From positions 124,001 through 188,000 of IMG/VR virus record IMGVR_UViG_3300009104_001210: a stretch of DNA of 64,000 nt; one strand, given 5' to 3'. The stretch's first letter is position 1. Each line of letters opens with the position of its first letter. A program made the translations under genes and the position numbers. The notes below the pieces were generated by a model. The model worked only from the letters and a program-made list of their open reading frames with translations. It ran no database searches and had not been told where the DNA came from. Positions 7,517-43,425 of this stretch are shown here, in pieces.

Positions 7517-7916
7517 ACAGAGGAAGTGGCTACCAACATTAGGAGAATTAATAGATAGACTTAGTATACATCAGTTGAAGGAAGTTTTTATACCTGAAAA
7601 TAAAGATAACTATGCAAAAGAGATGAATGATATGGTTCATGATATTGATATGATACTTAAAGAACATAAAGGTGAAATAACAGGAGAAGTTATCAGAGCT
7701 ATAGTTGTATTATCACAAATGAATCTACATATTTGGCATAACGAATCACAAGTTAGACAAGGTAAAAAAGGTACAGATAATCTTATGTTAACTCATGGAT
7801 TAAATGGAATTAGAAATACTGCTATTAATAAGATTATGGAAGTAGTTGGTGGAAGAAAAGATTTCAAGGTTGATTGTATCGCATCTGATTTTAAAGATTG
7901 GGAAGTATCATGGTAA
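7506..7916 (+). CDS. Hypothetical protein (LGELIDRLSI family)
   Basis: Intact coupled ORF; paralogue of 2911-3318. Confidence 0.55.
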   Translation: MMAKQRKWLPTLGELIDRLSIHQLKEVFIPENKDNYAKEMNDMVHDIDMILKEHKGEITGEVIRAIVVLSQMNLHIWHNESQVRQGKKGTDNLMLTHGLNGIRNTAINKIMEVVGGRKDFKVDCIASDFKDWEVSW

Positions 7917-9667
7917 AAGTTTCCATAATAGGAAAAGGTAAGTTTGGTAGTAAGATAGAAAATACTATTAAAGATATGGTTCAGTTTGTAGAACCAAATG
8001 ATGCAGATTGGATTATTATATCTACACCAAATGATTTACACGCTGAACACGTAGAGTATTGGTTAACTCAAAGAAAGAATGTATTCTGTGAAAAACCATT
8101 AGCACTTTCTAAAAGAACTGCTGAAGGATTATTTTCTCTTGCTGATTTCTTTAGTGTTAGACTCTATGTTGATGATGTACTTTATTGGATTAAAGAGTTG
8201 AATATAGATGTAGAAGGTAATACAAGTTGGAATTGGAAGAAGTATGGTTCTTTTAATGCAAATATTATTGATAATTTGGCATATCATGATTTTTATATGT
8301 GGGTCGGTTCAGATGACTTTGAAATAAAAGATGTGAAAGTACCACAATATAGTAGGAATGGTATGTATGTTAACATTACTTTAGAAGATGGTAGAACCGC
8401 TATATTTGAATACGATATATTAAGTGATGATTATTCACATACAGTACATGATGGTTGGAATGAAACTACATTAGAATATTCAGAAGATAGTGCATTAAAA
8501 GATATGTTTGGTTGTGTATTAGTTGATGAAGTGAGATGGCCAGGTGGTGGAGGACCAACTATTAACTATGAAGATAATAGGAAAAGAACTTTAAACGCAA
8601 TTAAACTATGTGAAGCAGTAAAGAAAGAGGCTCTTCCAAAAGTATTAGTAGTGGGTGGTGGAATATTTGGAACGACAGCAAGTGTGGCATTAGCAACATC
8701 AGGTTTCAATGTAACTTTACACGAAGAGTTAAGTGGTATAATGAAATGCGCTTCAGACATAAACCAATACAGGTTACATAGAGGATACCACTATCCAAGA
8801 AGTAAACAGACTGCACAAGAATGTTTAGATGGATTGAAATCGTTTAAGAGAAAGTATGGAGATAGTGTAGTCAACGGAGATGGTGTAAATCATTTTTATG
8901 CTATATCATCTCGTGATTCATTGGTATCAAGTGAAGATTATATAAAGTTTGTAAAAGAAATGGGATTAGATTATAATATATGTGAACCATTTCTTGGAAC
9001 AGATTTAACTATTGAAGTAGATGAAGAATTATTCGATAGTGAGAAACTTAGAGTACAAGTTACACAGAAGATGAAAGGTGCTGGTGTCAATGTAGTTCTC
9101 AACAAACATACTACAAAAGAAGACTTTGATGATTATGATTATGTTGTGATTGCTACATACTCAAAGTTAAATGAGTTGTTGGATGATAAGATACAATATC
9201 AGTATGAAGTGATTGAGAAACCTGTAGTTAAGTTGCCAGAGTGGTATAAAAATAAAAGTGTAGTTGTAATGGATGGTCCCTTTATGTGTTTCGATCCATA
9301 TAAAGATGGATATCATGTTTTGGGTCATGTTGAACACGCAATACATTCTACTAATGTGGGGGATTATCCAATGGTGTTAAATAAACATATTGTTGGGTAT
9401 TTAAACAATGGTATTATTCATAATCCAAAGGTTACTAAGATACAAAAGTTTATAGATGCTGGTATGGAGTATTTCGAAGATTTTGATAAGTTGGAACATA
9501 TTGGTTCTATGTTTACTGTTAGAACTGTATTGGCACATAGAGACCACGATGATGCAAGACCAACTATTGTTACACAAGAGAATGATAAGGTTTATACTAT
9601 ATTTTCAGGTAAGATAGGTACTTGTGTTCAAGCAGCTAATGAGTTAGTGGAAGAGTTAAGAAAATGA
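7910..9667 (+). CDS. Fusion: Gfo/Idh/MocA oxidoreductase + FAD-dependent (DAO-like) oxidoreductase
   Basis: IGKGKFG and FCEKP in N-half; VVGGGIFG FAD-binding motif and RLHRGYHYPRS in C-half. Confidence 0.8.
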   Translation: MVKVSIIGKGKFGSKIENTIKDMVQFVEPNDADWIIISTPNDLHAEHVEYWLTQRKNVFCEKPLALSKRTAEGLFSLADFFSVRLYVDDVLYWIKELNIDVEGNTSWNWKKYGSFNANIIDNLAYHDFYMWVGSDDFEIKDVKVPQYSRNGMYVNITLEDGRTAIFEYDILSDDYSHTVHDGWNETTLEYSEDSALKDMFGCVLVDEVRWPGGGGPTINYEDNRKRTLNAIKLCEAVKKEALPKVLVVGGGIFGTTASVALATSGFNVTLHEELSGIMKCASDINQYRLHRGYHYPRSKQTAQECLDGLKSFKRKYGDSVVNGDGVNHFYAISSRDSLVSSEDYIKFVKEMGLDYNICEPFLGTDLTIEVDEELFDSEKLRVQVTQKMKGAGVNVVLNKHTTKEDFDDYDYVVIATYSKLNELLDDKIQYQYEVIEKPVVKLPEWYKNKSVVVMDGPFMCFDPYKDGYHVLGHVEHAIHSTNVGDYPMVLNKHIVGYLNNGIIHNPKVTKIQKFIDAGMEYFEDFDKLEHIGSMFTVRTVLAHRDHDDARPTIVTQENDKVYTIFSGKIGTCVQAANELVEELRK

Positions 9668-10446
9668 AGAATGTGGTTTTCATACCAAACATTGATTTAG
9701 GAAATGGTAGGTCTACACCTTACCACTATTCAGTAAAGAGTTGGCAGAAGTGGTGTGATAAACACGATGTTGAATTATTAGAGTGGACTGATACAATTAT
9801 GGATCATAATAACTTCCCAATTATCTATCAGAGAGAATGGGTATTTGATATCATAGAACATAACGATATAGATTATGACCAAGTATTGATTATTGATGCA
9901 GATACTATAGTTCATCCTGATTGTCCTAACTTTTTTGAGAGAACTAACCACGAATATACTGCAGTAGTTAACAATGGTTGTTTCGAATGGGTTACACGAA
10001 GTATAAATGCTTGGGGTGAGTTTATGTTTCCTGATGTAGAGAAACCAAAGGTGTGGGAGTATTTTAATACAGGTTTTATTATAGCTAACAAGAAACATAA
10101 ACCATTTTTTAAAACAATACAAGAGTTTTATTTAGAGAATGTAGAACGACTGTATGAGATTAGGAATAACGAGAGGTATGAGAACTTAGCAATACCTGGA
10201 GTTGGTCAAACTTGTGTTAACTTTTTGGTAAAGAAACATAATATTAAAATGACTTATTTACCTGAAAGATTTAATTTAACAGACTTGTATAGAAAAGATA
10301 TGTTACATATCCCAGGTCAGAGTTGGTGGCCAGATAAACTTATTTATGAAGATACAGGTTATATATTTCATTTTAATGCTATACCACAAAACGATAGACA
10401 CGTAGAGTATTGGATGAAAAGAACTTATGAAGAGTGGTATAAATGA
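9664..10446 (+). CDS. GT8/GT34-like glycosyltransferase, paralogue of 5773-6531
   Basis: IIDADT, YFNTG, GQTCVN, FHFNA. Confidence 0.75.
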   Translation: MKNVVFIPNIDLGNGRSTPYHYSVKSWQKWCDKHDVELLEWTDTIMDHNNFPIIYQREWVFDIIEHNDIDYDQVLIIDADTIVHPDCPNFFERTNHEYTAVVNNGCFEWVTRSINAWGEFMFPDVEKPKVWEYFNTGFIIANKKHKPFFKTIQEFYLENVERLYEIRNNERYENLAIPGVGQTCVNFLVKKHNIKMTYLPERFNLTDLYRKDMLHIPGQSWWPDKLIYEDTGYIFHFNAIPQNDRHVEYWMKRTYEEWYK

Positions 10447-11198
10447 AACAATTATTAACTTTTGGGTGTAGTTTTACAGATGGACAAGACGGTGTTGGTT
10501 GGCCAACTCGTTTAGCAGAATTAATGGGGAGAGAACTTACAAATTATGGTAAGGGATCTGCAGGCAATTTTTATATTTCTAGCAAGATAGTAGAAGCGGT
10601 ATCAAAGTTAGAGGAACAGGATGTTTATATAGTTGTAATGTGGTCGGGTATAGATAGAGAGGATTTGGTTGTAAATAAATATGAACATAATTTTACTAAT
10701 GAAGAAGCTATGGAACTTGGTTATACAAGTACAGATATCACAAATGCATCGGGAGATTGGTTTCATAGTGGAGGATTGCCAATACCAAAACCAACCAAAC
10801 ATAGCTTAGGTATTACTGATTATACTAGTGGTTCAAGATTTTTTGAATGGTTTTGGGGGACATTTTTTAAAAACTATCACACTTTCGGGAATTCTTATCT
10901 TAAATCATTAAACAATATGCTGGCTACACAAAATCTATTAAAATTAAAAAATATTCCATATAAATTTGTAACTTTCAAAGACATATTTTCACATTCATTT
11001 GGTAAGTATAAATCAGCAGAACCATTTGAAAACTTAATAGATTGGGATAAATTTCATTTTGAACAGATAGGTAAGAAAAAATTTTGTGGAGAAGCTGAAT
11101 GGGTTAGGTGGAATAAGTTGACAGTTGCGGAAGATAATATACATCCAACTGTAGAATCACATTATAAATACGCAGAGCATCTATATGAAATTCTTTGA
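10443..11198 (+). CDS. SGNH/GDSL hydrolase-like protein
   Basis: FGCSFTDG, NYGKGSAGN, DNIHP. Confidence 0.65.
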   Translation: MKQLLTFGCSFTDGQDGVGWPTRLAELMGRELTNYGKGSAGNFYISSKIVEAVSKLEEQDVYIVVMWSGIDREDLVVNKYEHNFTNEEAMELGYTSTDITNASGDWFHSGGLPIPKPTKHSLGITDYTSGSRFFEWFWGTFFKNYHTFGNSYLKSLNNMLATQNLLKLKNIPYKFVTFKDIFSHSFGKYKSAEPFENLIDWDKFHFEQIGKKKFCGEAEWVRWNKLTVAEDNIHPTVESHYKYAEHLYEIL

Positions 11199-12342
11199 TG
11201 GACAATTTGTAGGAGAAAACAAACAGTATTCTACTTATCAAGAATGGTTTGAATATATGAAACAACATTTTTTATATGACAGTTGGGACATTCTTACAGA
11301 GAATACTATTGTATATCCACATTTAGAATCCATGTATACTTTAGATTTAGAAAGTATTTTTAGAGATGATCTTTTCAAGTTGACATATGAAGAACTTTTA
11401 AAATCAGATAAAAAGTTTATAACAATAGTAGAACCCACAGAATCAATATGGAGATATGAAGAATTTAGGACTGAAGATGGTTTAGAGTGTAATGTTATAA
11501 GATATATTCATTTGATGTGCGAAAGAACTTCAGTACCACAAGATAAGATTTTATTTATAACGAATGATTTGAATTGTAGGGAAGCATATGATGAGTGGTT
11601 TGAATACCATAACTTTGATAGTAAAATAAATTTACTTGGTTATCCAATGTACATTAATATACTATTATCAAATTATAGAAAAAAGGGGTTAAGAGAAGTA
11701 AAACCAAAAAATCCAAATAAAACATTCATTTCATTATTTGGTAGAAGAGATGATTATAGAGAAAGAATGTATGACTATATTGTAAAAAGTGAGTCATTAA
11801 ATAGTAAGAGTTACGTATCTAATATGGCATTAAATAAATTATTACCAAATAGTCATGTAGATATGGATAAATTTCAAAAAGAGGTTGAAAACGGAATAAC
11901 TACAGAGTCAGATTTTGAAACAGATGTTTTAGAACAATATTATAATGATTCATATTTTTCACTTATACCAGAATCCGCTAATTTTTTACCAATGAATAAC
12001 CCTACAGGATTCAAAACACCAACAGTATTTTTATCAGAAAAGTTAACAAGAGCAATTTATCACGGACACCCATTTCTTATATGGAGTTACCCAGGTGTTT
12101 TGAAACAATTAAAAGAATGGGGATTTCATACATTTTCAGAAATATTTGATGAGAGTTATGATGAGATAGAAGATGTAGGTGATAGATGTAATGCTATTTT
12201 GTCAGAACTTAAAAGAGTTAGTCAGTTGGATTGGAAAAATATGGATTTGAAAAGTAAGTTAGAGCACAATTGTAAAATATTATTGGAATTTAAGAAGCCA
12301 ACTGAAATATTTATACAAGAGTTGAAAGGTTTATATTCATAA
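11185..12342 (+). CDS. Putative glycan-modifying protein, paralogue of 24731-25843
   Basis: FLSEKLTRAIYHGHPF...LKEWGFHTFSEIFDESYD conserved C-domain. Confidence 0.45.
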   Translation: MKFFDGQFVGENKQYSTYQEWFEYMKQHFLYDSWDILTENTIVYPHLESMYTLDLESIFRDDLFKLTYEELLKSDKKFITIVEPTESIWRYEEFRTEDGLECNVIRYIHLMCERTSVPQDKILFITNDLNCREAYDEWFEYHNFDSKINLLGYPMYINILLSNYRKKGLREVKPKNPNKTFISLFGRRDDYRERMYDYIVKSESLNSKSYVSNMALNKLLPNSHVDMDKFQKEVENGITTESDFETDVLEQYYNDSYFSLIPESANFLPMNNPTGFKTPTVFLSEKLTRAIYHGHPFLIWSYPGVLKQLKEWGFHTFSEIFDESYDEIEDVGDRCNAILSELKRVSQLDWKNMDLKSKLEHNCKILLEFKKPTEIFIQELKGLYS

Positions 12343-13271
12343 TGAAAGTAGCATTCTTTACAGAAATGGGTTGGGAAGGCAAAGTAGACAGAACAACTCA
12401 TAACAATATGAGAACAGAGTTTGCATGGATGACTACATTAGACGCTGACCATTATAATATTCATGCGCCAACGTTAAAACAAGACTATGACTTGGGTATT
12501 GTTATAGTTCCTAAATCTAATCCAGAAATAAATCTAAAACCCTTAAAACAACATTGTGATAAGATAGCAATACAGCAAGAAGGTCCTCATTGGTATTTTC
12601 AAGATTATCCATTGACACATCAATTTCATTTTCATAATCATTTGATGGAAACGGATTATATTTTCTGTCATAATGAAGTTGATAAAAAATATTATGAGGG
12701 AATAACAAATAAACCTGTATTTGTTAATAGAAGTTTAATGTTACCTGAAGACTTAGTTCCAAGAAGTGAGTGGGGTGATGCAGTTATAATTGGTGGTAAC
12801 TTTGTAAGTTGGTATGGTGGATTTGATTCATATATGGTAGCAAGTATATTTCAGCCAGAAATGCAGATTTATGCACCATCAATGGGTAGAAAACAGAAGA
12901 TGGAAAATCAGATAGAAGATATAAAATATCTACCTTATCAGTTATGGAAAGATTGGATAAATACTTTGTCTCAATTTCATGTGGGAATACATATGATGAG
13001 AACACACGCAGCAGGAACATTTGCTATGAATTGTGCATTTCATGGTATTCCTTGTATTGGTTATAAAGGGTTAGATACACAAGAGATTTTACATCCTTCA
13101 TTAAGTGTTGAGTTAAGTGATATAAAAGAAGCTCGAAGATTAGCAGTTAGGTTGAAAGAGGAAGATGGTTTTTATGATGAGTGTTCTAGAATTTCTCGAA
13201 CAAGATATGAAGATGAATATTCAGAGGAAGAGTGGTTAAAAAGATTTAATGATTTTTGGAGTACAACATGA
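12342..13271 (+). CDS. GT-B fold glycosyltransferase-like protein
   Basis: HAAGTFAMNCAFHGIPCIG resembles the GT-B C-terminal motif. Confidence 0.55.
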   Translation: MKVAFFTEMGWEGKVDRTTHNNMRTEFAWMTTLDADHYNIHAPTLKQDYDLGIVIVPKSNPEINLKPLKQHCDKIAIQQEGPHWYFQDYPLTHQFHFHNHLMETDYIFCHNEVDKKYYEGITNKPVFVNRSLMLPEDLVPRSEWGDAVIIGGNFVSWYGGFDSYMVASIFQPEMQIYAPSMGRKQKMENQIEDIKYLPYQLWKDWINTLSQFHVGIHMMRTHAAGTFAMNCAFHGIPCIGYKGLDTQEILHPSLSVELSDIKEARRLAVRLKEEDGFYDECSRISRTRYEDEYSEEEWLKRFNDFWSTT

Positions 13272-14170
13272 GAGCATTAGTTACAGGTGGTGCCGGCTTT
13301 GTTGGTACTAATTTAATAAAAAGATTGTTAGAAGATGGACATGATGTAGTTTCAGTTGATAACTATTCTACAGGTAAAAAAGAAAACCACCAAGAGGGTT
13401 GTCAGTATTTTGATTATGATATATCAAGTAAACATACACTTGGGATATATGTAGATGTTGCAACATATCCAAGTTGGAGAGATAGTGAATATGATGTAAT
13501 ATTCCATTTGGCAGCACTACCAAGAATACAACCATCGTTTGAAACACCTATAGAATCTTTTCAAAGTAATGTTGTTGGAACTATGAATATTTTAGAGTTG
13601 GCTAGAAAGAATGGAAATATTCCTGTAGTATATGCAGGTTCTTCATCAACACATGGAGATAAATACTCTAACCCATATACATTTACAAAGTGGCAAGGTG
13701 AAGAGTTGTGTAAAATGTATACTAAGATATATGATTTACCCGTTACTATATGTAGATTTTATAATGTTTATGGGCCACATCAACTTACAGAGGGTGAATA
13801 TTGTACAGTTATTGGTATATTTGAAAATTTATATAAAAAGAATAAACTATTCACAATTACAGATGATGGAGAACAACGAAGAGATTTTACTCATGTTGAT
13901 GATATAGTAGATGGGTTGATAAGAGTAAGTAATCGTTTAACTTTATTTAAAGGGGGACATATTACAGGTGAAGAGTTTGAATTTGGTAGAGGTAAAAACT
14001 ATTCTATCAATGAGATAGCTGATGCTTTTGGTGAAGGTTATCCAAGAAAATATATCTCAAAAAGAGATGGTGAGATGAGAGAAACTTTGTGTATTGATAA
14101 AAAAGCTAGAAAAGAATTGGGTTGGAAACCAACAAAGGACGTGATACAATGGATAAAATTAGTTTTATAA
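13268..14170 (+). CDS. NAD-dependent epimerase/dehydratase
   Basis: TGGAGFVG, YTFTK, RFYNVYG, RRDFTHV; ATG at 13268. Confidence 0.9.
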   Translation: MRALVTGGAGFVGTNLIKRLLEDGHDVVSVDNYSTGKKENHQEGCQYFDYDISSKHTLGIYVDVATYPSWRDSEYDVIFHLAALPRIQPSFETPIESFQSNVVGTMNILELARKNGNIPVVYAGSSSTHGDKYSNPYTFTKWQGEELCKMYTKIYDLPVTICRFYNVYGPHQLTEGEYCTVIGIFENLYKKNKLFTITDDGEQRRDFTHVDDIVDGLIRVSNRLTLFKGGHITGEEFEFGRGKNYSINEIADAFGEGYPRKYISKRDGEMRETLCIDKKARKELGWKPTKDVIQWIKLVL

Positions 14171-15342
14171 TACCTTCAAGAGATAATCTAAGATATCTCA
14201 AGTGGGCATATGAAGGATTAAGAAAGAATTGCAGTAAACAACATCAGATTTGTTTGGCTGATGATGCATCAACCGATGGAACTTGGGAGTGGATGGTTGA
14301 AGAAAAAAAGAAGAATAAAAATTTAACAATATATAGAAATGAAGGTCCTAATAGATTAGGTTTAACTGTTTTGTATGATCATTTAGCTGAAGATTTTGCT
14401 ATCAATGATATACTTATGTTTTTCCATGCAGATATGTATCCATCTAAAGGTATGGATAAAAAAATATTGAGAAGATTGGAAAGGGGAACTGTAGTGTGTG
14501 CTACAAGAATTGAACCACCATTACATCCTGATGGACCTGAAAAAGTAATAGATGATTTAGGTTTTGAGCCAGAAGAATTCGATGAAAAAAAATTCAATCA
14601 AACAGTTAGGTTATATAGTAGGGATGATTTTACAGATGGAGTATTTGCGCCTTGGGCAATACATAAAGAAGATTATTTTGATGTTGGTGGACACGATCAA
14701 TTATTCATACCACAATCAAGAGAAGATAGTGATTTATTTAATAGATTTTATTTGAATGGATATCAGTTTAGGCAGATATGGGATGGTATGGTATATCACT
14801 TAACAAGTCGTGGTAGTAGATTTAGAGATGGAGTTGGTAAAGATAGTGAAGAATGGAAATATTCTAATCGTAGAAATGAAAGAAATTTTATTCGCAAGTG
14901 GGGAACTATAGTACATCATTCAGAAATGATGAAACCTGTAGTATTTCCAAAATATGATATAGGTATTGTAGTTAAAAATTGTAATCTTAGTTTATTAGTA
15001 GAGTTAGAACCCTGGTGTAACAATGTTTATACTGATTTAAATGCAGAAGAAATAAGAAAATATATAGAAGCTGAGCAACCACATACTCAATTTGATTTGA
15101 AAAAGAAAATATTATATCATTCTTCACCAATAACAAATGATGTTATTGTACGATTTGATATGAACGAATTGACAGAAGCTAAGGCTATGTTTATATCACA
15201 AATACCAATGACACTTTTTGAACATAAAGATGTAGGAGAGTTTAAGTTTGATATTTTTTCCATAAAAGTTAAGACTTTAGAATATGAAATGAAATCATTA
15301 GTTAAAACTAAACCATTAAAAGAGTACAATTTTAAATTATGA
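14149..15342 (+). CDS. Glycosyltransferase family 2
   Basis: ISFIIPS, ADDASTDGT, FHADM, EDSDL. Confidence 0.85.
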   Translation: MDKISFIIPSRDNLRYLKWAYEGLRKNCSKQHQICLADDASTDGTWEWMVEEKKKNKNLTIYRNEGPNRLGLTVLYDHLAEDFAINDILMFFHADMYPSKGMDKKILRRLERGTVVCATRIEPPLHPDGPEKVIDDLGFEPEEFDEKKFNQTVRLYSRDDFTDGVFAPWAIHKEDYFDVGGHDQLFIPQSREDSDLFNRFYLNGYQFRQIWDGMVYHLTSRGSRFRDGVGKDSEEWKYSNRRNERNFIRKWGTIVHHSEMMKPVVFPKYDIGIVVKNCNLSLLVELEPWCNNVYTDLNAEEIRKYIEAEQPHTQFDLKKKILYHSSPITNDVIVRFDMNELTEAKAMFISQIPMTLFEHKDVGEFKFDIFSIKVKTLEYEMKSLVKTKPLKEYNFKL

Positions 15343-16549: not shown

Positions 16550-16737
16550 TAGAAATAATATGTTATATTTTGATAGGCGCTATGTTAGGTGTAATGTCAA
16601 TGGCATTATTAAGTGCTAATAAATACAGCAAATATTGTTCAAGAGTTAGTGAGTTAGAACACGAAATAAAAACATTAAAACAAAGAGGTCGTAAACCTCA
16701 ACCAAAGAAGAAGCCCGTTAGGAGACGTAATGCCTAA
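16546..16737 (+). CDS. Small membrane protein
   Basis: N-terminal TM helix, basic tail. Confidence 0.55.
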   Translation: MIEIICYILIGAMLGVMSMALLSANKYSKYCSRVSELEHEIKTLKQRGRKPQPKKKPVRRRNA

Positions 16738-17368
16738 ACAGGGAGTTGATCCTTTTCGTAAAAAACCCATTCCAAAGGGTAGAATACAATGGGCTATATC
16801 AAATACTAAATCTTTGATGGCAGCTTCTCGGCTGTTACAAGTATCATATAATACATTTAAAAAGTATGCTAAACTGTATGATTTATTTCATCAGAATAAA
16901 AATGCAACAGGTATTGGTATATCTAAGGGACCAAAAGGTTCAAGTCAAGTAAAAATGGATAGAATTTTTAGTGGGCATCATCCCAACTATCCACATTATA
17001 GATTACAGGAAAGATTGTTGAAAGAGGGATACGCATCTCAAGAATGTAGTAATTGTGGGCATGATGAAGTTAGAAAATCAGATATGACTAGTCCATTACT
17101 ACTATGTTTTTTTGATAATGACCCAAAAAATCATAAGCTAGAAAATTTATATTTGTTGTGTTATAATTGTTTTTATTTATTAAAACCAGGTGGTCGTTTA
17201 CTTAACACACCATCTAATGTAGTTAGGTTGAGAAACAAAATGTTAGAAGCGTTAGGTCCTACACCCTTAGAAGAGCAAGAAGAGAGAGTAGCATATACAT
17301 TAGGTGATGTAGTTCAAGAAGAAAAAACAGATTTAATGAATCCATCACGTTCAATTGAAGATAAATAG
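16730..17368 (+). CDS. HTH + degenerate HNH/zinc-finger protein
   Basis: AASRLLQVSYNTFKKYA HTH; CSNC...NHKLENLYLLCYNC HNH-like scaffold. Confidence 0.6.
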   Translation: MPKQGVDPFRKKPIPKGRIQWAISNTKSLMAASRLLQVSYNTFKKYAKLYDLFHQNKNATGIGISKGPKGSSQVKMDRIFSGHHPNYPHYRLQERLLKEGYASQECSNCGHDEVRKSDMTSPLLLCFFDNDPKNHKLENLYLLCYNCFYLLKPGGRLLNTPSNVVRLRNKMLEALGPTPLEEQEERVAYTLGDVVQEEKTDLMNPSRSIEDK

Positions 17369-18566: not shown

Positions 18567-18797
18567 TTGAATAAAAAAATAGTTATCGTCGGCTTAATAT
18601 TTTTAATCGCCCCGATATTCACGTATTGGGAATACCGATTCACCCCCGACATACAAGATGTCGAGGGATTCCTACCTATCAACACCCAAAGCGTCTCATC
18701 TCGTAGCGTATCTTTATCTCATATTTCTCACCAAGTCAGACTTGTTTCGATTACTAATAGCGGATCATCACCCGAAATGGTATGGTTAGTACAATGA
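18567..18797 (+). CDS. Hypothetical membrane protein
   Basis: N-terminal TM; GC-richer codon use. Confidence 0.4.
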   Translation: MNKKIVIVGLIFLIAPIFTYWEYRFTPDIQDVEGFLPINTQSVSSRSVSLSHISHQVRLVSITNSGSSPEMVWLVQ

Positions 18798-19114
18798 GCG
18801 TAGCTAAAATTTGGTTAAGATTATGGTGGATTGGTATAGGTTTAATAGTTATCAGAGCTAAACTTATTGTTCAACGTCTTAGATGGACACTTGAAGATGA
18901 GTATAGCACCTATAGAGGTTGGAAGAAGCGTAGACATACAGAACCAGCAAGAGTAGCAGATACTATTGTTATACCAACGCCAAAGCAAACTAAATCAAAC
19001 CATGAAGGACCCGTAGACTATACCTCAGCGCCTTACATAGGTAACGGCTCAAGTGGTAAATTCTACGACTCTTCATTCAACGACGATAGTACCACAAACC
19101 AACACGATATATAG
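18794..19114 (+). CDS. Hypothetical membrane protein
   Basis: ATGA-coupled; N-terminal TM. Confidence 0.45.
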   Translation: MSVAKIWLRLWWIGIGLIVIRAKLIVQRLRWTLEDEYSTYRGWKKRRHTEPARVADTIVIPTPKQTKSNHEGPVDYTSAPYIGNGSSGKFYDSSFNDDSTTNQHDI

Positions 19115-19600
19115 ATATATATACAAGAATACACGAAGATTCTCGCTTCGCTCTAAATTTTAAAGCGCCAATACCCGAACAGTATATAGTAATCAGCGCC
19201 TCACTCTGATAAGCTCACAAAGCACACAAATCATTGAATCCTGAAGGATAAATACACTCGCCACTATTATACTTATGTGATATAATATAGGAAAAAAGCT
19301 ACAGGAGAGTAGAGGATGCGCTCTCTTAATGATACTATAAGCGTCTTACATATCATCCATATCCCACCCTTTTAACCCACCACAACCCACGAATATGATA
19401 GATTCATATGGCCTGGGAGTAAAAAATATAATACCTCACTACTAATTTTGCTTAGCGCGTGTGTGTCGCGCGCCATTTCCTGCCAGTAGGGGGGCTTTTC
19501 TACGCTAATGTAGCACGGTAGCCTATCCAAGCGCTATCGTATGACATTTTGACATACCCAGGCGCTAGGATTATATCACCGCCCGCCAAATTTTTTTGAG

Positions 19601-19637
19601 AAAAGGCTTGACTTATATAGCGTTTCTTTCGTATATT
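19601..19637 (+). promoter_or_regulatory. Sigma70-like early promoter
   Basis: AAAAGGC-TTGACT 19608-13, 18-nt spacer, TATATT 19632-37. Confidence 0.7.
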
Positions 19638-19691
19638 CGTAGTATCATGTAGTATATAGCCCACTTGAAAGGCAGCGCTGTCTAACCTGGT

Positions 19692-19730
19692 AATATACGC
19701 ACCCTGCCTGAGAAAGTCAAGCTTTATTTT
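19692..19730 (-). promoter_or_regulatory. Sigma70-like promoter, minus strand
   Basis: Minus strand AAAATAAAGC-TTGACT, 17-nt spacer, TATATT. Confidence 0.6.
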
Positions 19731-19802
19731 CATTATTTTGGTAAAACCTATACAGGGACCCCCAAATATTCCGCGCGGTACGCTAAAAAGAAAATAGTGA
19801 AG

Positions 19803-19838
19803 AAAAGGCTTGACACGTATTGCTTTATTTTGTATATT
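19803..19838 (+). promoter_or_regulatory. Sigma70-like early promoter
   Basis: AAAAGGC-TTGACA 19810-15, 17-nt spacer, TATATT 19833-38. Confidence 0.75.
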
Positions 19839-20082
19839 CCAGTATGATAATGAGGTTATATACTTGACTTAGATAAAGCCCGCTCCATGAAATAAGGGAA
19901 TAGTACTGAAAAGCGGCAAAGGGCGTAAAGCCGCATGAAAAAAGAATGGTATTTCAACGCTTTAGTTGATACTTATTCTTAGAAGGTTTTCATTACGTCA
20001 GGTTCTTATTCCTTTCTACCTGACATACGGTGGGTGGCTATGAAATACTATACAGCCGCCCACCAAAAAAATTAGAAGGTTT

Positions 20083-20154
20083 GCGGTGGAAGTATCAAGA
20101 GAGATACGCTATTCGTCCAGAGTAGAAGGTGCAGTGCGATTCTGTAACACCGCT
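20083..20154 (+). tRNA. Non-canonical tRNA-like cloverleaf, Gly(TCC)-like
   Basis: Acceptor GCGGTGG/ACACCGC (one mismatch), D stem GTAT/ATAC, anticodon stem CTATT/AGTAG with loop CG-TCC-AG, T stem TGCAG/CTGTA with loop TGCGATT, U73. Confidence 0.55.
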
Positions 20155-20159
20155 CTAAC

Positions 20160-20199
20160 TGAGTAGTATATTACTCACTTGAGTAGTATTTTACTCACT
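20160..20199. repeat. Tandem 20-bp palindromic repeat (operator-like or twin hairpins)
   Basis: TGAGTAGTATATTACTCACT followed by TGAGTAGTATTTTACTCACT. Confidence 0.8.
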
Positions 20200-20247
20200 A
20201 TATTGGAATAGGTAAAAAACGAAAGAAAGGCGGTACGCTAAAAAATA

Positions 20248-20442
20248 ATGAGCGCAAACTTACGAAGTATAATAGACATAGATAAAGAGATACAGCAAGA
20301 AATCGTGCAAGATCTAATAAGTGGTATATTCTATACAGAATGCGACGACGAAACGCTTGAAATTGCTCTGCAAGCGATGTTTGAGTCTCCACAGACAAAA
20401 GCGTATTGGCGCTCAACGGGAGTGATTTTAGGGGACGGGTAG
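20248..20442 (+). CDS. Hypothetical acidic protein
   Basis: 64-aa ORF with AAAGG upstream. Confidence 0.5.
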   Translation: MSANLRSIIDIDKEIQQEIVQDLISGIFYTECDDETLEIALQAMFESPQTKAYWRSTGVILGDG

Positions 20443-20525
20443 GCAATTACTCGTGAATCGCAAAGTATGACAAAATGACACGCTCGCCTTACCTGTACTC
20501 GTATCGAGGAGAAATTTTGAGGAAT

Positions 20526-21850: not shown

Positions 21851-22117
21851 ATGACGTACTTATCCAACAAAGATTATTATCGAATAGGTGGATGTGATAA
21901 CGTAGTAGATTTACACGGAATGAAACACGAAGAAGTAGAAAGTAAATTAGAGAATTGGTTAATATTACATTATAACATAGGTAACTTTCCTATTAAAGTT
22001 ATTACAGGTAATAGTGAGAGAATGAAAGAGATAGTAAAAGAATCAGCGTATAGAAGAGGATTTAAAACAACTAATCCACTTGACGGAAATACAGGAGTAC
22101 TGATAGTAACTTCATAA
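21851..22117 (+). CDS. Stand-alone Smr domain protein
   Basis: VVDLHG and IKVITGNS motifs. Confidence 0.75.
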   Translation: MTYLSNKDYYRIGGCDNVVDLHGMKHEEVESKLENWLILHYNIGNFPIKVITGNSERMKEIVKESAYRRGFKTTNPLDGNTGVLIVTS

Positions 22118-23564: not shown

Positions 23565-23978
23565 ATGGATATGATTAAACTACAAAAATTAATGGAACAT
23601 TTTGAAATAGATTCAGAGGATACTGCAGGTATTTGTGTAATCTATGGAAAAAAATTACTTGCGTGTAAACGTACAGAGTCTTATTGGTCAATACCAAAAG
23701 GACATATACATATAAATGAAGAACCATTAGATGGTGCTTTGAGAGAGTTTACAGAAGAGACGCAAGTTATGTTAAATGGTGTACCAGAGTTAGTATCTAC
23801 TACAAATAAAAAAAGTGGTAAATTTTATTTGTATAAATACGAAACTGATAAAAGAATAAACCCACACTTAGATCATGAACATGAAGAGTGGGGATATTTT
23901 GAGGTAGATAAATTACCACAACCCTTTGATGAAAAGGTATTAAATGAGTTACAAAAGGTTATAGGAGATATAAAATGA
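23565..23978 (+). CDS. NUDIX hydrolase
   Basis: KGHIHINEEPLDGALREFTEET Nudix box. Confidence 0.85.
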   Translation: MDMIKLQKLMEHFEIDSEDTAGICVIYGKKLLACKRTESYWSIPKGHIHINEEPLDGALREFTEETQVMLNGVPELVSTTNKKSGKFYLYKYETDKRINPHLDHEHEEWGYFEVDKLPQPFDEKVLNELQKVIGDIK

Positions 23979-24734: not shown

Positions 24735-25843
24735 GTATAGTTCCAAATAATTGGACAGGTTTTTCAGAAAAAACTGAACGTTTATTGGTAGAAAATAGTT
24801 ATTTATTCGAAAAAAGACCATTTGACTATAAAAAAGATGGTGATCCTGTAAGAGAAAGTGAGTTAAAAGAGGCAGTAGAGTCAACTAATAAGCCTTTTTT
24901 AATGATAAATCTAACTGAATTTTGGGAATGTGATATGTTTAATCACGCTGGTGGTAAACATTTTATAAAATTACATGACTTTTTAGAGACAATTATCCCA
25001 TTAAATAGAGTTATATTGGTTGGAGACGACTGTAATTTAGCTAAATTGTATGATAAATGGTTTGAAACTACCAATTATAAAGAAAAAATGCATGTAATAT
25101 CATACCCAATTCTTTTTGCTGAAAGATCAAGGGAGTATATTCGAGAAGATCAAGGATTTGGTGGTAATAATTTTCATGTAATAGAACGTTATAAAGATAG
25201 AAGAAAGTTACCAAGTAAAAAGTTAATGTGTCTTATGGGAATATACTCAAGACATAGAAACTCTTTACAAAAATTTTTCCACAACAATGATTTATGGGAA
25301 AGTAATTATATTAGTTATATTGGAAATGATAATTATAAAAATCCAATACTATTACCTGATAGTGGCATCATGGAGCGGATCGTAATGAGGTCATCTACAC
25401 CAAGAACTGATTTTGGTTTAGCAAAATATTTCAAAGATTCTTGTTATTCATTTATACCCGAATCAAATAAATGGACTGTGGCACCAAACTCATTATTCTT
25501 AACAGAAAAAACAACTAAAGTATTATATCACGGACACCCATTTATGATCATGTCTAGTGTTGGTGCATTAAAACAATTAAGAGAGTGGGGATTCGAAACC
25601 TTTCCTGAAATGTTTGATGAGACTTATGATGAAATAGAAAATGCTGTTGAGAGAGATAGATTTTTTAAAAATAATATGTTAAGATTACAAAGAATGGAAT
25701 TATCAGAATTGCATAAGTTGTGTGAAAGTGTAGAAGAGAAATGTATACACAATCAAAAAGTTTTATTAGAATCAAAAATAATAGATGATAAATTTTATAA
25801 TGAAATCTCAGGTGTTGTTAATAGTTCGGTGGTGGTTCCCTGA
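24731..25843 (+). CDS. Putative glycan-modifying protein, paralogue of 11185-12342
   Basis: FLTEKTTKVLYHGHPF...LREWGFETFPEMFDETYD. Confidence 0.45.
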   Translation: MSIVPNNWTGFSEKTERLLVENSYLFEKRPFDYKKDGDPVRESELKEAVESTNKPFLMINLTEFWECDMFNHAGGKHFIKLHDFLETIIPLNRVILVGDDCNLAKLYDKWFETTNYKEKMHVISYPILFAERSREYIREDQGFGGNNFHVIERYKDRRKLPSKKLMCLMGIYSRHRNSLQKFFHNNDLWESNYISYIGNDNYKNPILLPDSGIMERIVMRSSTPRTDFGLAKYFKDSCYSFIPESNKWTVAPNSLFLTEKTTKVLYHGHPFMIMSSVGALKQLREWGFETFPEMFDETYDEIENAVERDRFFKNNMLRLQRMELSELHKLCESVEEKCIHNQKVLLESKIIDDKFYNEISGVVNSSVVVP

Positions 25844-39169: not shown

Positions 39170-39604
39170 GGGGCTGAATGGTTTCGACAGATGCTATTTG
39201 ATAATATAGTGCAACGGAGTTTGAGTAAGACTTGCTATAAAAGACTCACAAACCCAAAATGGCGATAAATCGCTACAAGGGTTGGAAATTGATTGGCATT
39301 TAGCCAATACCGAACAGATGTTTGACACTTATGTTGAACCTGCAAGGGCTTCCCAACCAACTTACGCATACGCATAAGTTACTGAGTTACCTAACACTCG
39401 GTCATAAAATGAGTTAGGTGGTAGGATGGTTGGTATATGTCTTTGAGTAGGAATTAGACGATAAAGAAACCTATCAGTTAAACTCATCTGAGTAAATGAG
39501 GTATGGTGGGTTGTTAGTTGACTACCGATTTGGAAACTAACTAAGTTGTAAATGACTATTTATTAAAAGTAGACTGGACGCGGGTTCGAATCCCGCCAGC
39601 TCCA
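39170..39604 (+). ncRNA. ssrA: tmRNA (one-piece)
   Basis: 5' GGGGCTGAATGGTTTCGAC, 3' T-arm GCGGG-TTCGAAT-CCCGC, acceptor CAGCTCC-A with G3:U70; internal ORF ending TAA 39375-77. Confidence 0.93.
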
Positions 39605-39624
39605 CTAAAATTGAGGAGAATATT

Positions 39625-42245: not shown

Positions 42246-42317
42246 GGCCCCATCGTCTAATGGTGAGGACGTCGCCCTTTCAAGGCGGAGATATGGGTTC
42301 GACTCCCGTTGGGGCTA
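42246..42317 (+). tRNA. tRNA-Glu(TTC)
   Basis: Full cloverleaf; loop CT-TTC-AA; no encoded CCA. Confidence 0.92.
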
Positions 42318-42318
42318 C

Positions 42319-42401
42319 GGGCAGGTAGCAAAGCGGTTAAATGCACCAAACCGTAAGTTTGGCGTCGTGAGACTACGGTGGTTCGAATCCATCCCTGCCC
42401 T
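42319..42401 (+). tRNA. tRNA-Tyr(GTA), atypical C33/G38/U73
   Basis: GGGCAGG/CCTGCCC acceptor, long variable arm, loop CC-GTA-AG. Confidence 0.8.
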
Positions 42402-42402
42402 C

Positions 42403-42475
42403 GGGGCTGTAGCTCATTTGGGAGAGCGCTTCCCTTGCACGGAAGAGGCAGCAGGTTCGATTCCTGTCAGCTCCA
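42403..42475 (+). tRNA. tRNA-Ala(TGC)
   Basis: G3:U70, loop CT-TGC-AC. Confidence 0.93.
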
Positions 42476-42476
42476 C

Positions 42477-43070
42477 ATGAAAAATCTATCTAGATCTGAA
42501 ATAAGAGAAATAAAGAATAACCAATCAGAGTTGTATATGGAAAATGATAACTTTAAAGTTATTATACCATATACACATGATGCAGTTAAGATATATGGTA
42601 AAGGTACTAGTTGGTGTGTTTCTTGGGCAAAAGACGAAGACTATCAGTTTTATAATAAAACAGGTAAAATTCTTTTAATACTTAAAAAGAATGTTCATAT
42701 TAAAGATAATACTGAAATAGATGATGTGTGTTATAAAGTATCTATGTGGATGCCATATCAAAAATATTTGCCACTATATAGAAATTTTGGAAAAGGTGGT
42801 ATAGAAGATATAGCTAAAAGATATGAGTCCGATAAAGAGTTATATAAAAGCGTATTAAATGGTTATGTAAATTCGGTTGATGGTATTACTATTCATAAAA
42901 TAACAGCAGATTTTGAATATTATGATGCTGATGATGCGCATTGTTTTATGCCTGTAAAGTATATAGAAGGAGATAAAGTAGTTTGCATAGATAGAGATTG
43001 GGAATTAGATTGGGAAATATTTGATAGTATAAGATATAAGTATGAATATGAGTGGCAATTTGAAGGATAA
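42477..43070 (+). CDS. Hypothetical protein (GTSWC motif)
   Basis: ATG one base after the tRNA-Ala discriminator; upstream track start lies inside tRNAs. Confidence 0.6.
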   Translation: MKNLSRSEIREIKNNQSELYMENDNFKVIIPYTHDAVKIYGKGTSWCVSWAKDEDYQFYNKTGKILLILKKNVHIKDNTEIDDVCYKVSMWMPYQKYLPLYRNFGKGGIEDIAKRYESDKELYKSVLNGYVNSVDGITIHKITADFEYYDADDAHCFMPVKYIEGDKVVCIDRDWELDWEIFDSIRYKYEYEWQFEG

Positions 43071-43074
43071 TAAT

Positions 43075-43148
43075 GTGCTGGTGCCGGAGTGGTCTAACGG
43101 GGTGGGTTGCAAACCCATTATTCACAGGTTCGAATCCTGTTCAGCACT
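43075..43148 (+). tRNA. tRNA-Cys(GCA)
   Basis: Loop TT-GCA-AA, U73. Confidence 0.9.
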
Positions 43149-43301
43149 CATAACTAAGGAGAAATACCAATGTAATATACAACACTAAATATAAGATTAG
43201 GGTTTAGCAGTACCAATATATAAACTGTCGGTGTTTAAAGTACACCACAAAATTTAGTGTACGGATGGTATCTAAAGAGGGACGGAGGCGGGAAAAAATT
43301 A

Positions 43302-43374
43302 GCCACTTTAGCTCAGTTGGTAGAGCAGCTCACTTGTAATGAGCAGGTCCTCAGTTCGAGTCTGAGAAGTGGCT
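43302..43374 (+). tRNA. tRNA-Thr(TGT)
   Basis: GCCACTT/AAGTGGC acceptor, loop CT-TGT-AA. Confidence 0.93.
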
Positions 43375-43385
43375 CAAAAATAATT

Positions 43386-43425
43386 AAAAAAAGGCTTGAC
43401 TCGCATGGTCCAAAATGCCTATATT
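43386..43425 (+). promoter_or_regulatory. Sigma70-like early promoter
   Basis: A-tract-GGC-TTGACT 43396-401, 18-nt spacer, TATATT 43420-25. Confidence 0.75.

What the first reader, a model, noticed from the sequence alone, without database searches (positions are those of the whole stretch)
19114..20250. GC/CpG-rich 1.1-kb non-coding hub with convergent and divergent promoters
Seen: the only long ORF-poor stretch with sharply raised CG/GCGC content. It holds a + promoter (19601-37) facing a - promoter (19692-730), a second + promoter (19803-38), a 15-bp direct repeat GCGGTACGCTAAAAA (19775, 20230), three CCCAC repeats (19363-91) and hairpins at 19455-73, 19998-20024 and 20029-64. Gene content switches here from enzymes to tiny early-type ORFs. 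Inference: genome terminus/pac site, first-injected region or transcription-primed origin.
Basis: partly seen in the sequence, partly recalled or inferred. Interest (0 to 1): 0.65.

Follow-up and report, generated by a model that had tools for sequence, protein, structure and literature searches.

The report
Phage early-promoter and structured-RNA locus
The GC-rich gap in this marine T4-like jumbo phage is most likely not a genome end: it holds host-type early promoters and a non-coding RNA unit carrying a conserved RNA motif absent from Rfam and a tRNA-Gly-like element.

Summary
Window 19115-20474 is the longest ORF-free gap of the whole 216-kb phage genome. GC is 0.40 against 0.31, CpG o/e 1.07 against 0.52, and it is the only place where GC skew falls to zero. 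The three promoters, the 15-mer repeat, the CCCAC cluster and the hairpins are all there.

The terminus/pac reading gets no support, and the origin reading stays untested. Positive evidence points elsewhere:
- **RNA unit.** Promoter P3 heads a roughly 310-nt non-coding unit. It starts with a 74-nt two-hairpin RNA motif (19872-19945), found in about 70 marine metagenome loci with strong covariation and no Rfam match.
- **tRNA-like end.** The unit ends in a cloverleaf derived from tRNA-Gly(UCC) (20083-20155). The helices covary, but the window's copy fails tRNA detectors.
- **Facing promoters.** The P1/P2 pair recurs in 21 distinct relatives, always with 50-54 nt between the -10 boxes and with unrelated spacer sequence.
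- **Short DNA motifs.** CCCAC repeats, TGWCA dyads and tandem 18-bp palindromes keep a conserved order around these parts.

In a 93%-identical relative, the hub is more conserved than the flanking genes.

Best reading: an early-transcription control region plus a stable-RNA operon, loosely like T4's tRNA/stable-RNA region. No transcript was observed. The functions of the RNA motif and of the facing promoters are unknown.

The parts
19133..19151 (.). Hairpin at the left border, just after the stop of the upstream ORF. It scores as terminator-like on the minus strand and is followed by a weaker T-run on the plus strand.
   Evidence: sequence
19258..19286 (+). P0: promoter-like site with an extended -10 (TG-n-TATAAT).
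   Evidence: 10 of 12 matches, TG present. 19233-19298 is 84% conserved in the distant relative L138.
19363..19390 (.). Three CCCAC repeats, the only such cluster in the genome. Relatives carry the equivalent block at the same place in the motif order.
19455..19471 (.). GC-only 5-bp hairpin (GCGCG / CGCGC) with a 7-nt loop.
19524..19578 (.). Dyad element: the TGWCA-N4-TGWCA pair (19542-19554) flanked by inverted ATCCAAGCGC / GCGCTAGGAT arms. The central A/T of each TGWCA flips freely among relatives, which suggests a protein-binding DNA site rather than an RNA helix.
   Evidence: Only 3 such pairs exist in the genome, and 2 of them flank the hub.
19597..19637 (+). P1: early-promoter cassette (A-rich upstream part, AAAGGCTTGAC, 18-nt spacer, TATATT).
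19692..19731 (-). P2: the same promoter type on the minus strand, facing P1. The -10 boxes are 54 nt apart, so predicted starts lie about 40 bp apart.
   Evidence: 21 distinct relatives have the pair with 50-54 nt spacing.
19775..19789 (+). Copy 1 of the 15-mer GCGGTACGCTAAAAA, just upstream of P3.
19799..19838 (+). P3: the best host-type promoter of the region (11 of 12 matches). It lies about 100 nt upstream of the RNA motif in most related loci.
19845..20155 (+). Predicted non-coding transcript from P3, running from the inferred start to the 3' end of the tRNA-like element. No transcript was observed.
   Evidence: Fold energy z = -3.15, 0 of 100 shuffles as stable. No conserved ORF. 19847-20047 is identical in L147, which differs from the window at about 7% overall.
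19872..19945 (+). Conserved RNA motif: AGCCCG, hairpin P1, a conserved purine-rich junction, 5-bp hairpin P2 with an invariant 12-nt loop, then CAUGAA. A pseudoknot between GCCC (19879-81 region) and GGGC (19921-24) is possible.
19942..20064 (+). Three hairpins of the variable middle part: 19942-80, 19997-20024 and 20029-64. The second keeps its loop and changes its stem in L138. The third takes a 24-nt insertion in its loop in L147.
20083..20155 (+). Cloverleaf derived from tRNA-Gly(UCC). It keeps the UCC anticodon, but has G at position 33, G at position 55 and no GG in the D loop.
   Evidence: Not called by ARAGORN or the Rfam tRNA model.
20160..20199 (.). Two tandem 18-bp palindromes with a 20-bp period. 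This is the only copy pair in the genome.
   Evidence: The same tandem pair occurs in other phage contigs in unrelated contexts.
20230..20244 (+). Copy 2 of the 15-mer, 3 nt before the start codon of the first gene. In relatives the element follows the tRNA-like element and sits in a hairpin followed by a T-run.
20248..20442 (+). First protein gene after the hub (64 aa, no family match). It keeps this position after the RNA unit in relatives.
   Evidence: tblastn 33-46% identity in 9 related loci. No Pfam, PHROG or cultured-phage match.
20443..20508 (.). Second TGWCA-N4-TGWCA element (20468-20480) with a conserved flank. In many relatives it lies about 50 nt before the start of the next conserved gene.

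Best explanation
The hub is an early-transcription control region joined to a stable-RNA operon of a marine T4-like jumbo phage.

RNA unit. Host RNA polymerase with its main sigma factor would start at P3. It would make a non-coding RNA of about 310 nt, with this layout:
- a short leader like that of the phage's other early transcripts;
- a conserved two-hairpin, probably pseudoknotted motif;
- a variable set of hairpins;
- a tRNA-Gly-derived cloverleaf at the 3' end.
The cloverleaf most likely serves as a handle for tRNA-processing enzymes (RNase P, RNase Z) that release the upstream RNA, or still acts as an odd tRNA. The motif's invariant unpaired bases suggest that it binds a ligand, protein or RNA.

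Facing promoters. Upstream, P1 and P2 face each other at a fixed distance, so two polymerases would sit or collide head to head and make about 40 nt of complementary RNA. The likeliest role is a gate or insulator between the upstream enzyme genes and the early block.

DNA sites. The CCCAC repeats, the TGWCA dyads and the tandem palindromes are probably protein-binding sites that regulate these promoters.

Shown here: the sequence features, their conservation and the covariation. Inferred only: transcription starts and ends, RNA processing, protein binding, and every function.
For: Promoters.
- The extended cassette with AAAGGCTTGAC occurs exactly 7 times in 216 kb, always on the + strand, and twice in the hub. 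P2 is a close variant on the other strand.
- Strict TTGAC-N16-18-TAYAWT sites number only 5 in the whole genome, and 2 are in the hub.

RNA motif.
- 70 metagenome loci matched the search pattern. 39 distinct sequences were aligned.
- 97.6% of cells pair and 10 pairs show changes on both sides. No shuffle of 500 reached the observed pairing or covariation score, and slid controls pair at 22-62%.
- The stem positions were left free in the search pattern, so this covariation is not built in.
- The covariance model finds one copy per locus at 71-89 bits, against 18.8 bits for a chance hit.
- A promoter lies about 100 nt upstream in most loci.

tRNA-like element.
- Homologues in L068 and L069 are called tRNA-Gly(UCC) by ARAGORN and by Rfam at 38.2 bits.
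- Across 8 distinct sequences, 95.8% of cells pair and 10 of 21 pairs have compensatory changes; no shuffle of 500 reached these values.
- The thermodynamic fold of the window's copy is a cloverleaf.

Selection on the hub.
- Against L147, positions 19213-19742 are 98.7% identical and 19847-20047 are 100% identical. The coding stretch 18900-19114 is about 89% identical.
- In run X8, 19411-19746 shows 3 differences in 336 nt, against 37 in 1132 nt for the upstream gene.

Facing promoters. 21 distinct pairs have 50-54 nt between the -10 boxes, although 30-90 nt was allowed. Their spacers are dissimilar.

Other support.
- The minus-strand ORFs in the hub have no protein-level conservation.
- Other ORF-free gaps of the window also hold RNA genes: a tmRNA and a manA-like RNA.
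Against: - No transcript was seen. The one RNA run available holds a single contig, at 18779-18957, outside the hub.
- The window's cloverleaf fails both tRNA detectors and lacks three near-universal tRNA bases, so its activity is unknown.
- The pseudoknot cannot be tested, because both strands are invariant in every member found.
- No clear intrinsic terminator follows the RNA unit in the window. The RNA could therefore instead be a long leader of the 64-aa gene.
- The left half (19115-19600) has only modest fold support (z -2.5 on the plus strand, -1.6 on the minus strand) and no covariation data. Its single-copy repeat cluster would suit an origin as well as a regulatory region.
Confidence: 0.58

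Rival explanations
1. Long regulatory leader. The P3 RNA is not a free-standing RNA but a 400-nt 5' leader of the 64-aa gene and the early block behind it. The conserved motif would then act as a riboswitch-like sensor that sets read-through or translation.
For: - The 64-aa gene, or a small ORF in its place, follows the motif within about 280-490 nt in many relatives.
- No convincing terminator lies between the RNA and the gene in the window.
- The motif has the look of an aptamer: many invariant unpaired bases set between covarying helices.
- The loop of hairpin 19997-20024 is complementary to the purine tract before the gene, in both the window and L138 (direct reading).
Against: - In several relatives the conserved GCGGTACGC element forms a hairpin with a T-run right after the tRNA-like element and before the gene. 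That looks like the end of an RNA-only unit.
- A tRNA-like element inside a leader would be unusual.
- The middle part between the motif and the gene is freely exchanged among relatives.
- The motif was not found in 185,579 prokaryote genomes, so no host gene context hints at a ligand.
Confidence: 0.2
2. Replication origin. Transcription from the facing and diverging promoters opens the DNA or primes synthesis, as at T4 oriF/oriG or the T7 primary origin. The CCCAC repeats and TGWCA dyads would be the sites for an initiator protein.
For: - The CCCAC cluster is single-copy, and two of the genome's three TGWCA pairs flank the hub. Both keep their order in distant relatives.
- A minus-strand promoter has no gene to serve, since every gene runs the other way.
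- The fixed P1/P2 spacing suggests that the act of transcription matters more than the RNA sequence.
Against: - GC and AT skew show no step at the hub. The best change-point lies near genome position 60-66 kb.
- No replication gene adjoins the hub; the DNA polymerase lies about 31 kb upstream.
- T4-type phages use several origins and then recombination-driven replication (background knowledge).
- Most of the conserved sequence in the right half is accounted for by RNA structure.
Confidence: 0.12
3. Recombination debris. The hub is a hot spot where mobile promoter cassettes and a decaying tRNA gene have piled up, with no function of its own.
For: - The modules are shuffled among relatives. The palindrome pair, the tRNA-like element and the promoter copies change order and number.
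- Two parts of the hub look like a duplication (19743-66 and 20043-66, 71% identical).
- T4-type phages are known to shuffle ORFs through conserved promoter cassettes (PMC2839356, PMC4122927).
- The tRNA-like copy has lost conserved bases.
Against: - The hub is more conserved than the neighbouring genes.
- Helices of the motif and of the cloverleaf keep pairing through compensatory changes.
- The P1/P2 spacing is held within 5 nt across 21 distinct sequences.
Confidence: 0.07
4. Physical genome end or pac site, where packaging starts and which enters the cell first.
For: - It is the longest non-coding stretch of the genome, with repeats and hairpins.
- Gene content changes at this point.
Against: - Three independent assemblies run through it without a break or rearrangement.
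- The terminase and portal genes are 86 kb away. In well-studied pac phages the site lies in or next to the terminase genes (background knowledge).
- The contig has no terminal overlap that would place a collapsed repeat here.
- Contig breaks in run X4 fall at internal repeats such as the palindrome pair.
Confidence: 0.03

Closest known systems
Phage T4 tRNA and stable-RNA region (eight tRNAs plus the small RNAs C and D, transcribed early and cut out by host tRNA-processing enzymes). From background knowledge.
   Same: - T4-like myovirus.
- A non-coding island among small early genes, headed by host-type promoters.
- It combines a tRNA-type cloverleaf with other structured RNA in one predicted transcript.
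   Different: - The leading RNA is a separate conserved pseudoknot-type motif with no Rfam match.
- The only cloverleaf is a divergent tRNA-Gly derivative. The phage's regular tRNAs lie 22 kb away.
- Processing is inferred, not shown.
PeSL cassettes of T4-type phages: a conserved early promoter plus a stem-loop that mediate modular shuffling (PMC2839356, PMC4122927).
   Same: - A near-consensus sigma-70 promoter is kept as a long conserved cassette.
- It is repeated in front of small variable ORFs (6 copies in 3 kb in L013).
- Modules are exchanged among relatives.
   Different: - No consistent stem-loop accompanies the cassettes here.
- Two cassettes are arranged head to head at a fixed distance, which those papers are not known to describe. 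I read only part of one of them.
Face-to-face promoter switches of temperate phages P2 (Pe/Pc) and 186 (pR/pL). From background knowledge.
   Same: Two sigma-70 promoters point at each other with starts a few tens of bp apart. Polymerases would therefore interfere, and the 5' ends of the RNAs are complementary.
   Different: - The host phage looks lytic and T4-like.
- No repressor genes flank the pair.
- The leftward promoter serves no gene.
- The spacing is conserved while the sequence between is not.
T4 oriF/oriG and the T7 primary origin: promoter-dependent origins. From background knowledge.
   Same: Promoters sit next to AT-rich DNA and repeated short motifs in a non-coding stretch.
   Different: - No evidence of initiation here.
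- No skew step.
- Much of the stretch is taken up by RNA structure.
Large or ornate phage-associated RNAs that sit beside tRNAs (GOLLD, ROOL) and the marine manA RNA. All are in Rfam.
   Same: - A phage-borne structured RNA next to a tRNA-type element.
- Marine metagenome distribution.
- A manA-like RNA lies right after the unit in relatives L068/L069 and elsewhere in this window.
   Different: - No Rfam model matches the hub, even at E up to 10.
- The conserved core is small (74 nt), with exchangeable modules behind it.

Membership tests
tRNA (Rfam RF00005 / ARAGORN) | Four-helix cloverleaf kept by base pairing | tested here: met
   95.8% of cells pair and 10 of 21 pairs have compensatory changes across 8 distinct homologues. 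The thermodynamic fold of the window's copy is a cloverleaf.
tRNA (Rfam RF00005 / ARAGORN) | Score above threshold with tRNA detectors | tested here: not met
   ARAGORN calls nothing at 20083-20155. The Rfam tRNA model gives no hit at E up to 10 in a 371-nt search. Homologues in L068 and L069 do pass, at 38.2 bits against a cut-off of 29.
tRNA (Rfam RF00005 / ARAGORN) | Near-universal bases U33, G18-G19 and U55 | tested here: not met
   The window's copy has G33, no GG in the D loop and G55. L068 and L127 keep the usual bases (alignment).
Any Rfam 15 family, for the motif at 19872-19945 | Covariance-model match | tested here: not met
   No hit at E up to 1 over 6 kb. Over 371 nt at E up to 10, only chance-level hits appeared elsewhere in the stretch, such as preQ1-II at 21.3 bits against a cut-off of 47. 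None was found in relatives either.
Riboswitch-type cis-regulator | Conserved aptamer-like core with covarying helices and invariant junction bases | tested here: met
Riboswitch-type cis-regulator | An expression platform (terminator or start-site hairpin) coupled to the core, and a ligand | tested here: inconclusive
   No terminator lies directly after the motif. The sequence after it is variable among relatives. The ligand cannot be tested with these tools.
PeSL mobile regulatory cassette (T4-type phages) | Near-consensus early promoter kept as a repeated conserved cassette | tested here: met
   7 exact copies of the core plus variants, all with a -10 box at 17-18 nt. Many copies occur in relatives.
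PeSL mobile regulatory cassette (T4-type phages) | Stem-loop joined to the promoter | tested here: not met
   Folding the 74 nt upstream of the 8 cassettes gives no shared hairpin.
Packaging site or physical terminus | Read starts or ends pile up, or depth steps, at the site | not testable with these tools
   All runs laid were assembled contigs. No such places were reported, and contigs cannot show them.
Packaging site or physical terminus | Assemblies break or permute at the site; the site lies near the terminase genes | tested here: not met
   Contigs from three sources run through the site. The large terminase lies at genome 57149-58726, and the hub at about 143-144 kb.
Promoter-dependent replication origin (T4 oriF/oriG, T7 type) | Compositional step or depth peak at the site; initiation shown | tested here: inconclusive
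   No GC or AT skew step at the hub. Skew here tracks gene direction, so the test is weak. Depth gradients are not available.
Face-to-face promoter switch (P2 / 186 type) | Two sigma-70 promoters converging, with starts a few tens of bp apart | tested here: met
   By sequence only: 54 nt between the -10 boxes here, and 50-54 nt in 21 distinct relatives.
Face-to-face promoter switch (P2 / 186 type) | Repressor genes read from the two promoters | tested here: not met
   No conserved ORF lies leftward of P2. The first rightward gene has no family match.

The most novel reading that the evidence does not exclude
The 74-nt motif may be a new class of phage-only functional RNA, such as a ligand sensor, a ribozyme or a mimic of a host RNA. 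It would be made at the very start of infection and trimmed through a tRNA-shaped handle.

One weak lead: its invariant loop matches E. coli 16S rRNA positions 566-576. That much identity arises by chance in about 3% of shuffles.

The head-to-head promoter pair at fixed spacing may be a new kind of transcriptional gate, or an origin-opening device, in lytic T4-like phages.
Probability: 0.3. Interest if true: 0.8.

Novelty: new variant of a known kind. Interest (0 to 1): 0.62.

Why it matters
- **A new RNA family candidate.** Marine T4-like phages are abundant, but their early regulation is barely known. The locus offers a testable structured-RNA family candidate: about 70 loci, strong covariation, no Rfam match, and not found in 185,579 prokaryote genomes.
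- **A tRNA turned into something else.** The tRNA-Gly gene changes step by step among relatives into a cloverleaf that keeps its helices but loses tRNA hallmarks. That is a natural series for asking what phage tRNA-like elements are for.
- **An unexplained promoter design.** The pair of facing early promoters has spacing held within 5 nt while its sequence drifts. This needs an explanation in a genome where every gene runs one way.
- **A practical rule.** In this AT-rich phage, the ORF-free gaps examined here hold RNA genes, not genome ends. The hub and the tmRNA gap are also GC-raised.

Tried and rejected
- **Cultured-phage matches.** blastn of the hub and tblastn of the 64-aa gene found nothing. 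The closest cultured relative by polymerase, Microcystis phage Mel-JY01 (47.7% identity), has no match to the motif model.
- **Rfam.** No family matches the hub.
- **Prokaryote genomes.** A scan of 185,579 genomes for the motif pattern gave only 4 hits, in Trichodesmium-type cyanobacteria. They lack both helices and the AGCCCG box, so they are unrelated.
- **Pseudoknot test.** A loop-free search pattern found two more members, but with the same loop and the same box, so there was no variation to test.
- **16S rRNA mimicry.** The 11-nt identity is real, but about 3% of shuffled motifs share as long a word with 16S. I kept it only as a lead.
- **15-mer as a general promoter.** It has only two copies in the genome. 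The words enriched before ORFs are a Shine-Dalgarno type and ATATTTAT instead.
- **Minus-strand ORFs of 77 and 52 aa.** Rejected as genes. No protein-level conservation exists beyond the near-identical L147.
- **DnaA-box reading of the CCCAC block.** Compared by eye only, it matches 5-7 of 9 positions. Not pursued.
- **Terminal redundancy.** The contig ends share no overlap.
- **RNA evidence.** The one RNA run holds a single 179-nt contig outside the hub, so expression of the hub is undecided.
- **Literature.** A search for Mel-JY01 found nothing.
Full report
**Setting.** The window is positions 124001-188000 of a single 216,422-bp virus contig with 31% GC. Every long ORF but one lies on the + strand. 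The phage has a tail sheath, tail fibres, a family-B DNA polymerase, a large terminase, a portal and a major head protein of the T4 type. Its polymerase is 47.7% identical to that of Microcystis phage Mel-JY01 and about 33% to marine cyanomyoviruses. The DNA is found in marine and seawater metagenomes of 12 studies. It is therefore an uncultured marine jumbo myovirus distantly related to T4.

**Checking the observation.** The finding is accurate.
- Window 19115-20474 is the longest stretch of the whole genome without a + strand ORF of 70 aa or more.
- For 19114-20250, GC is 0.397 against 0.310. There are 48 CpG against a mean of 13.2 per window of equal size (o/e 1.07 against 0.52), and 9 of the genome's 77 GCGC.
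- It is the only region where GC skew falls to zero or below.
- The three promoters are the best sigma-70-type sites of the region. Only five strict TTGAC-N16-18-TAYAWT sites exist in the genome, and two are here.
- The 15-mer repeat, the CCCAC cluster and the hairpins are as described.
- The one overstatement is "only": the window has five other gaps of 461-957 nt.

**Promoters.** P1 and P3 belong to an extended cassette: an A-rich stretch, AAAGGCTTGAC, a 17-18-nt spacer and TATATT or TATGAT. Its core occurs exactly seven times in the genome, always on the + strand. Five of these copies lie elsewhere, in front of genes or next to the tRNA cluster. This looks like the phage's early-promoter class, read by the host polymerase. 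P2 is a close variant on the opposite strand. A fourth candidate, P0 at 19258-86, has an extended -10 box and is conserved in a distant relative.

**The RNA headed by P3.** A distant relative, L013, carries the same sequence downstream of a P3-like promoter, with two compensatory changes in a 5-bp stem.
- I searched the metagenome collection with a pattern that fixed the loop and flanks but left the stem free. It returned 70 loci, of which 68 carry an AGCCCG box at the right distance.
- In 39 distinct sequences, both hairpins pair in 97.6% of cells. Ten pairs show changes on both sides.
- No shuffle of 500 reached the observed pairing or covariation score, and slid registers pair at only 22-62%.
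- A covariance model finds exactly one copy in this genome (85.6 bits) and one per related locus (71-89 bits). A chance hit scores 18.8 bits.
- The GCCC of the 5' box can pair with the GGGC of the invariant loop to form a pseudoknot. Both are invariant in every member, including two found with a loop-free pattern, so this cannot be tested.
- No Rfam 15 family matches.
- The pattern found no true member in 185,579 prokaryote genomes, and the model found none in Mel-JY01.
- A promoter lies about 100 nt upstream of the motif in most loci.

**The tRNA-like end.** In relatives L068 and L069, the stretch homologous to window 20083-20155 is a plain tRNA-Gly(UCC).
- The window's copy keeps the UCC anticodon and all four helices. 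It has G at position 33, G at position 55 and no GG in the D loop. ARAGORN and the Rfam model both miss it.
- Other relatives have still odder T loops.
- Yet across 8 distinct sequences, 95.8% of cells pair and 10 of 21 pairs carry compensatory changes, including in the acceptor stem.
- The cloverleaf shape is thus under selection even where tRNA hallmarks are gone.
- I read it as a tRNA-derived element whose shape is what matters, most simply as a cutting signal for RNase P and RNase Z. This is inference.

**Between motif and cloverleaf.** Here lie three hairpins.
- One (19997-20024) keeps its loop and changes its stem in L138.
- Another (20029-64) accepts a 24-nt insertion in its loop in L147.
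- The whole predicted 318-nt RNA folds better than all 100 shuffles (z = -3.15).

**Conservation.**
- Against L147, a Tara contig about 93% identical overall, 19213-19742 is 98.7% identical and 19847-20047 is 100% identical. The upstream coding stretch 18900-19114 is about 89% identical.
- The differences in the hub are a 72-nt insertion between P2 and P3, changes in the P3 spacer that spare both hexamers, and the loop insertion.
- A third sample shows the same pattern.
- The 64-aa ORF at 20248 is a real gene, kept after the RNA unit in nine relatives. The minus-strand ORFs of the hub are not conserved.

**The facing promoters.** P1 and P2 recur as a pair in 21 distinct sequences from related loci. 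The gap between the two -10 boxes is always 50-54 nt, although 30-90 nt was allowed. The sequence between them is barely alike. With starts about 7 nt after each box, the two RNAs would overlap by roughly 40 nt, and two polymerases would meet head on. The transcribed start of P2 is not conserved, whereas that of P1 resembles the other early leaders. This points to the act of transcription, or to the short duplex, as what is selected. An insulator or gate at the entry to the early block is my preferred reading. An origin-opening role cannot be excluded.

**Short DNA motifs.** Relatives keep one order: CCCAC block, TGWCA-N4-TGWCA, P1 facing P2, P3, the motif, then a second TGWCA pair about 50 nt before the next conserved gene.
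- The central A/T of each TGWCA flips freely. This breaks any RNA pairing but leaves a palindromic 5-mer, as expected of a protein-binding DNA site.
- Inverted ATCCAA / TTGGAT-type arms flank the upstream pair.
- The tandem 18-bp palindromes, with a 20-bp period, occur as the same pair in other phage contigs in unrelated contexts.
- The 15-mer belongs to a conserved GCGGTACGC element. In relatives it follows the cloverleaf, forms a hairpin with a T-run, and precedes the small gene.
- None of these has an assigned protein.

- Terminus or pac site: three independent assemblies cross the hub. The terminase genes are 86 kb away, and the contig has no end overlap. Read-start evidence was not obtainable, because all runs were contigs.
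- Origin: skew shows no step at the hub, and the best change-point is near 60-66 kb. This test is weak here.
- First-injected region: not testable.
- The early-region part of the idea fits the promoter evidence.

**Comparison with known systems.**
- The nearest analogue is T4's tRNA and stable-RNA region (background knowledge).
- The repeated promoter cassettes resemble the PeSL elements that shuffle ORFs in T4-type phages (PMC2839356, PMC4122927). The stem-loop part is missing here.
- Facing promoters are known from the P2 and 186 switches, but there they serve repressor genes.
- The motif is not in Rfam. Whether it has been described elsewhere I could not establish.

**Verdict.** A real and unusual feature, wrongly interpreted as a genome end. 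Its best-supported identity is an early promoter cluster plus a non-coding RNA operon that contains a candidate new RNA family and a tRNA-like element. Function is unproven, because no expression data were available.

Noticed in passing
window 39170-39607 (+): A phage-encoded tmRNA (Rfam RF00023, 77.5 bits against a cut-off of 47) fills another ORF-free gap. ARAGORN did not call it.
   Followed up: partly
window 57997-58193 (+): A manA-like RNA (44.7 bits, E 1e-9, below the curated cut-off of 55.2) lies in the 957-nt gap. In relatives L068/L069 a manA-like match lies right after the tRNA-Gly of the hub unit, so these RNA modules move relative to each other.
   Followed up: partly
window 42246-43375 (+): A cluster of five regular tRNAs (Glu, Tyr, Ala, Cys, Thr). 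Early-promoter cassettes follow it at 43387 and 44328.
   Followed up: no
window 15575, 43387, 44328, 63567; genome 110298 and 188118: Further copies of the extended early-promoter cassette, all on the + strand. One variant lies just before the DNA polymerase gene.
   Followed up: partly
window 7898-15342 (+): A run of sugar-modifying enzymes upstream of the hub: an oxidoreductase, an NAD-dependent epimerase/dehydratase and a family-2 glycosyltransferase. This may reflect DNA or surface-sugar modification.
   Followed up: no
window 16730-17368 (+): An ORF with an HNH endonuclease match (PHROG, E 5e-10).
   Followed up: no
window 18779-18957: The only contig of the one RNA library that matches the laid stretch lies here, in the 110-aa ORF just left of the hub. 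That ORF is C-rich, lies in the negative-skew zone, and has no homologue beyond the near-identical L147. Its coding status is uncertain.
   Followed up: partly
window 25485-25801 and genome 10266-10582: A 320-nt stretch inside the 370-aa ORF is 78% identical to a stretch near the tail-fibre region, 139 kb away. This is a dispersed repeat or a shared domain.
   Followed up: no
whole genome, 60 nt upstream of ORFs: Besides a Shine-Dalgarno-type word (TAGGAGA), ATATTTAT/TATTTAT is enriched about fourfold before ORF starts. It may be another promoter class of this phage.
   Followed up: no
window 21851-22117 and 23565-23978 (+): Among the small ORFs after the hub, one has an Smr domain and one a NUDIX domain. 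The rest have no family match.
   Followed up: no
window 19921-19931: The invariant loop of the motif plus its closing base (GGGCGUAAAGC) is identical to E. coli 16S rRNA 566-576. About 3% of shuffled motifs share an equally long word with 16S, so this may be chance.
   Followed up: yes
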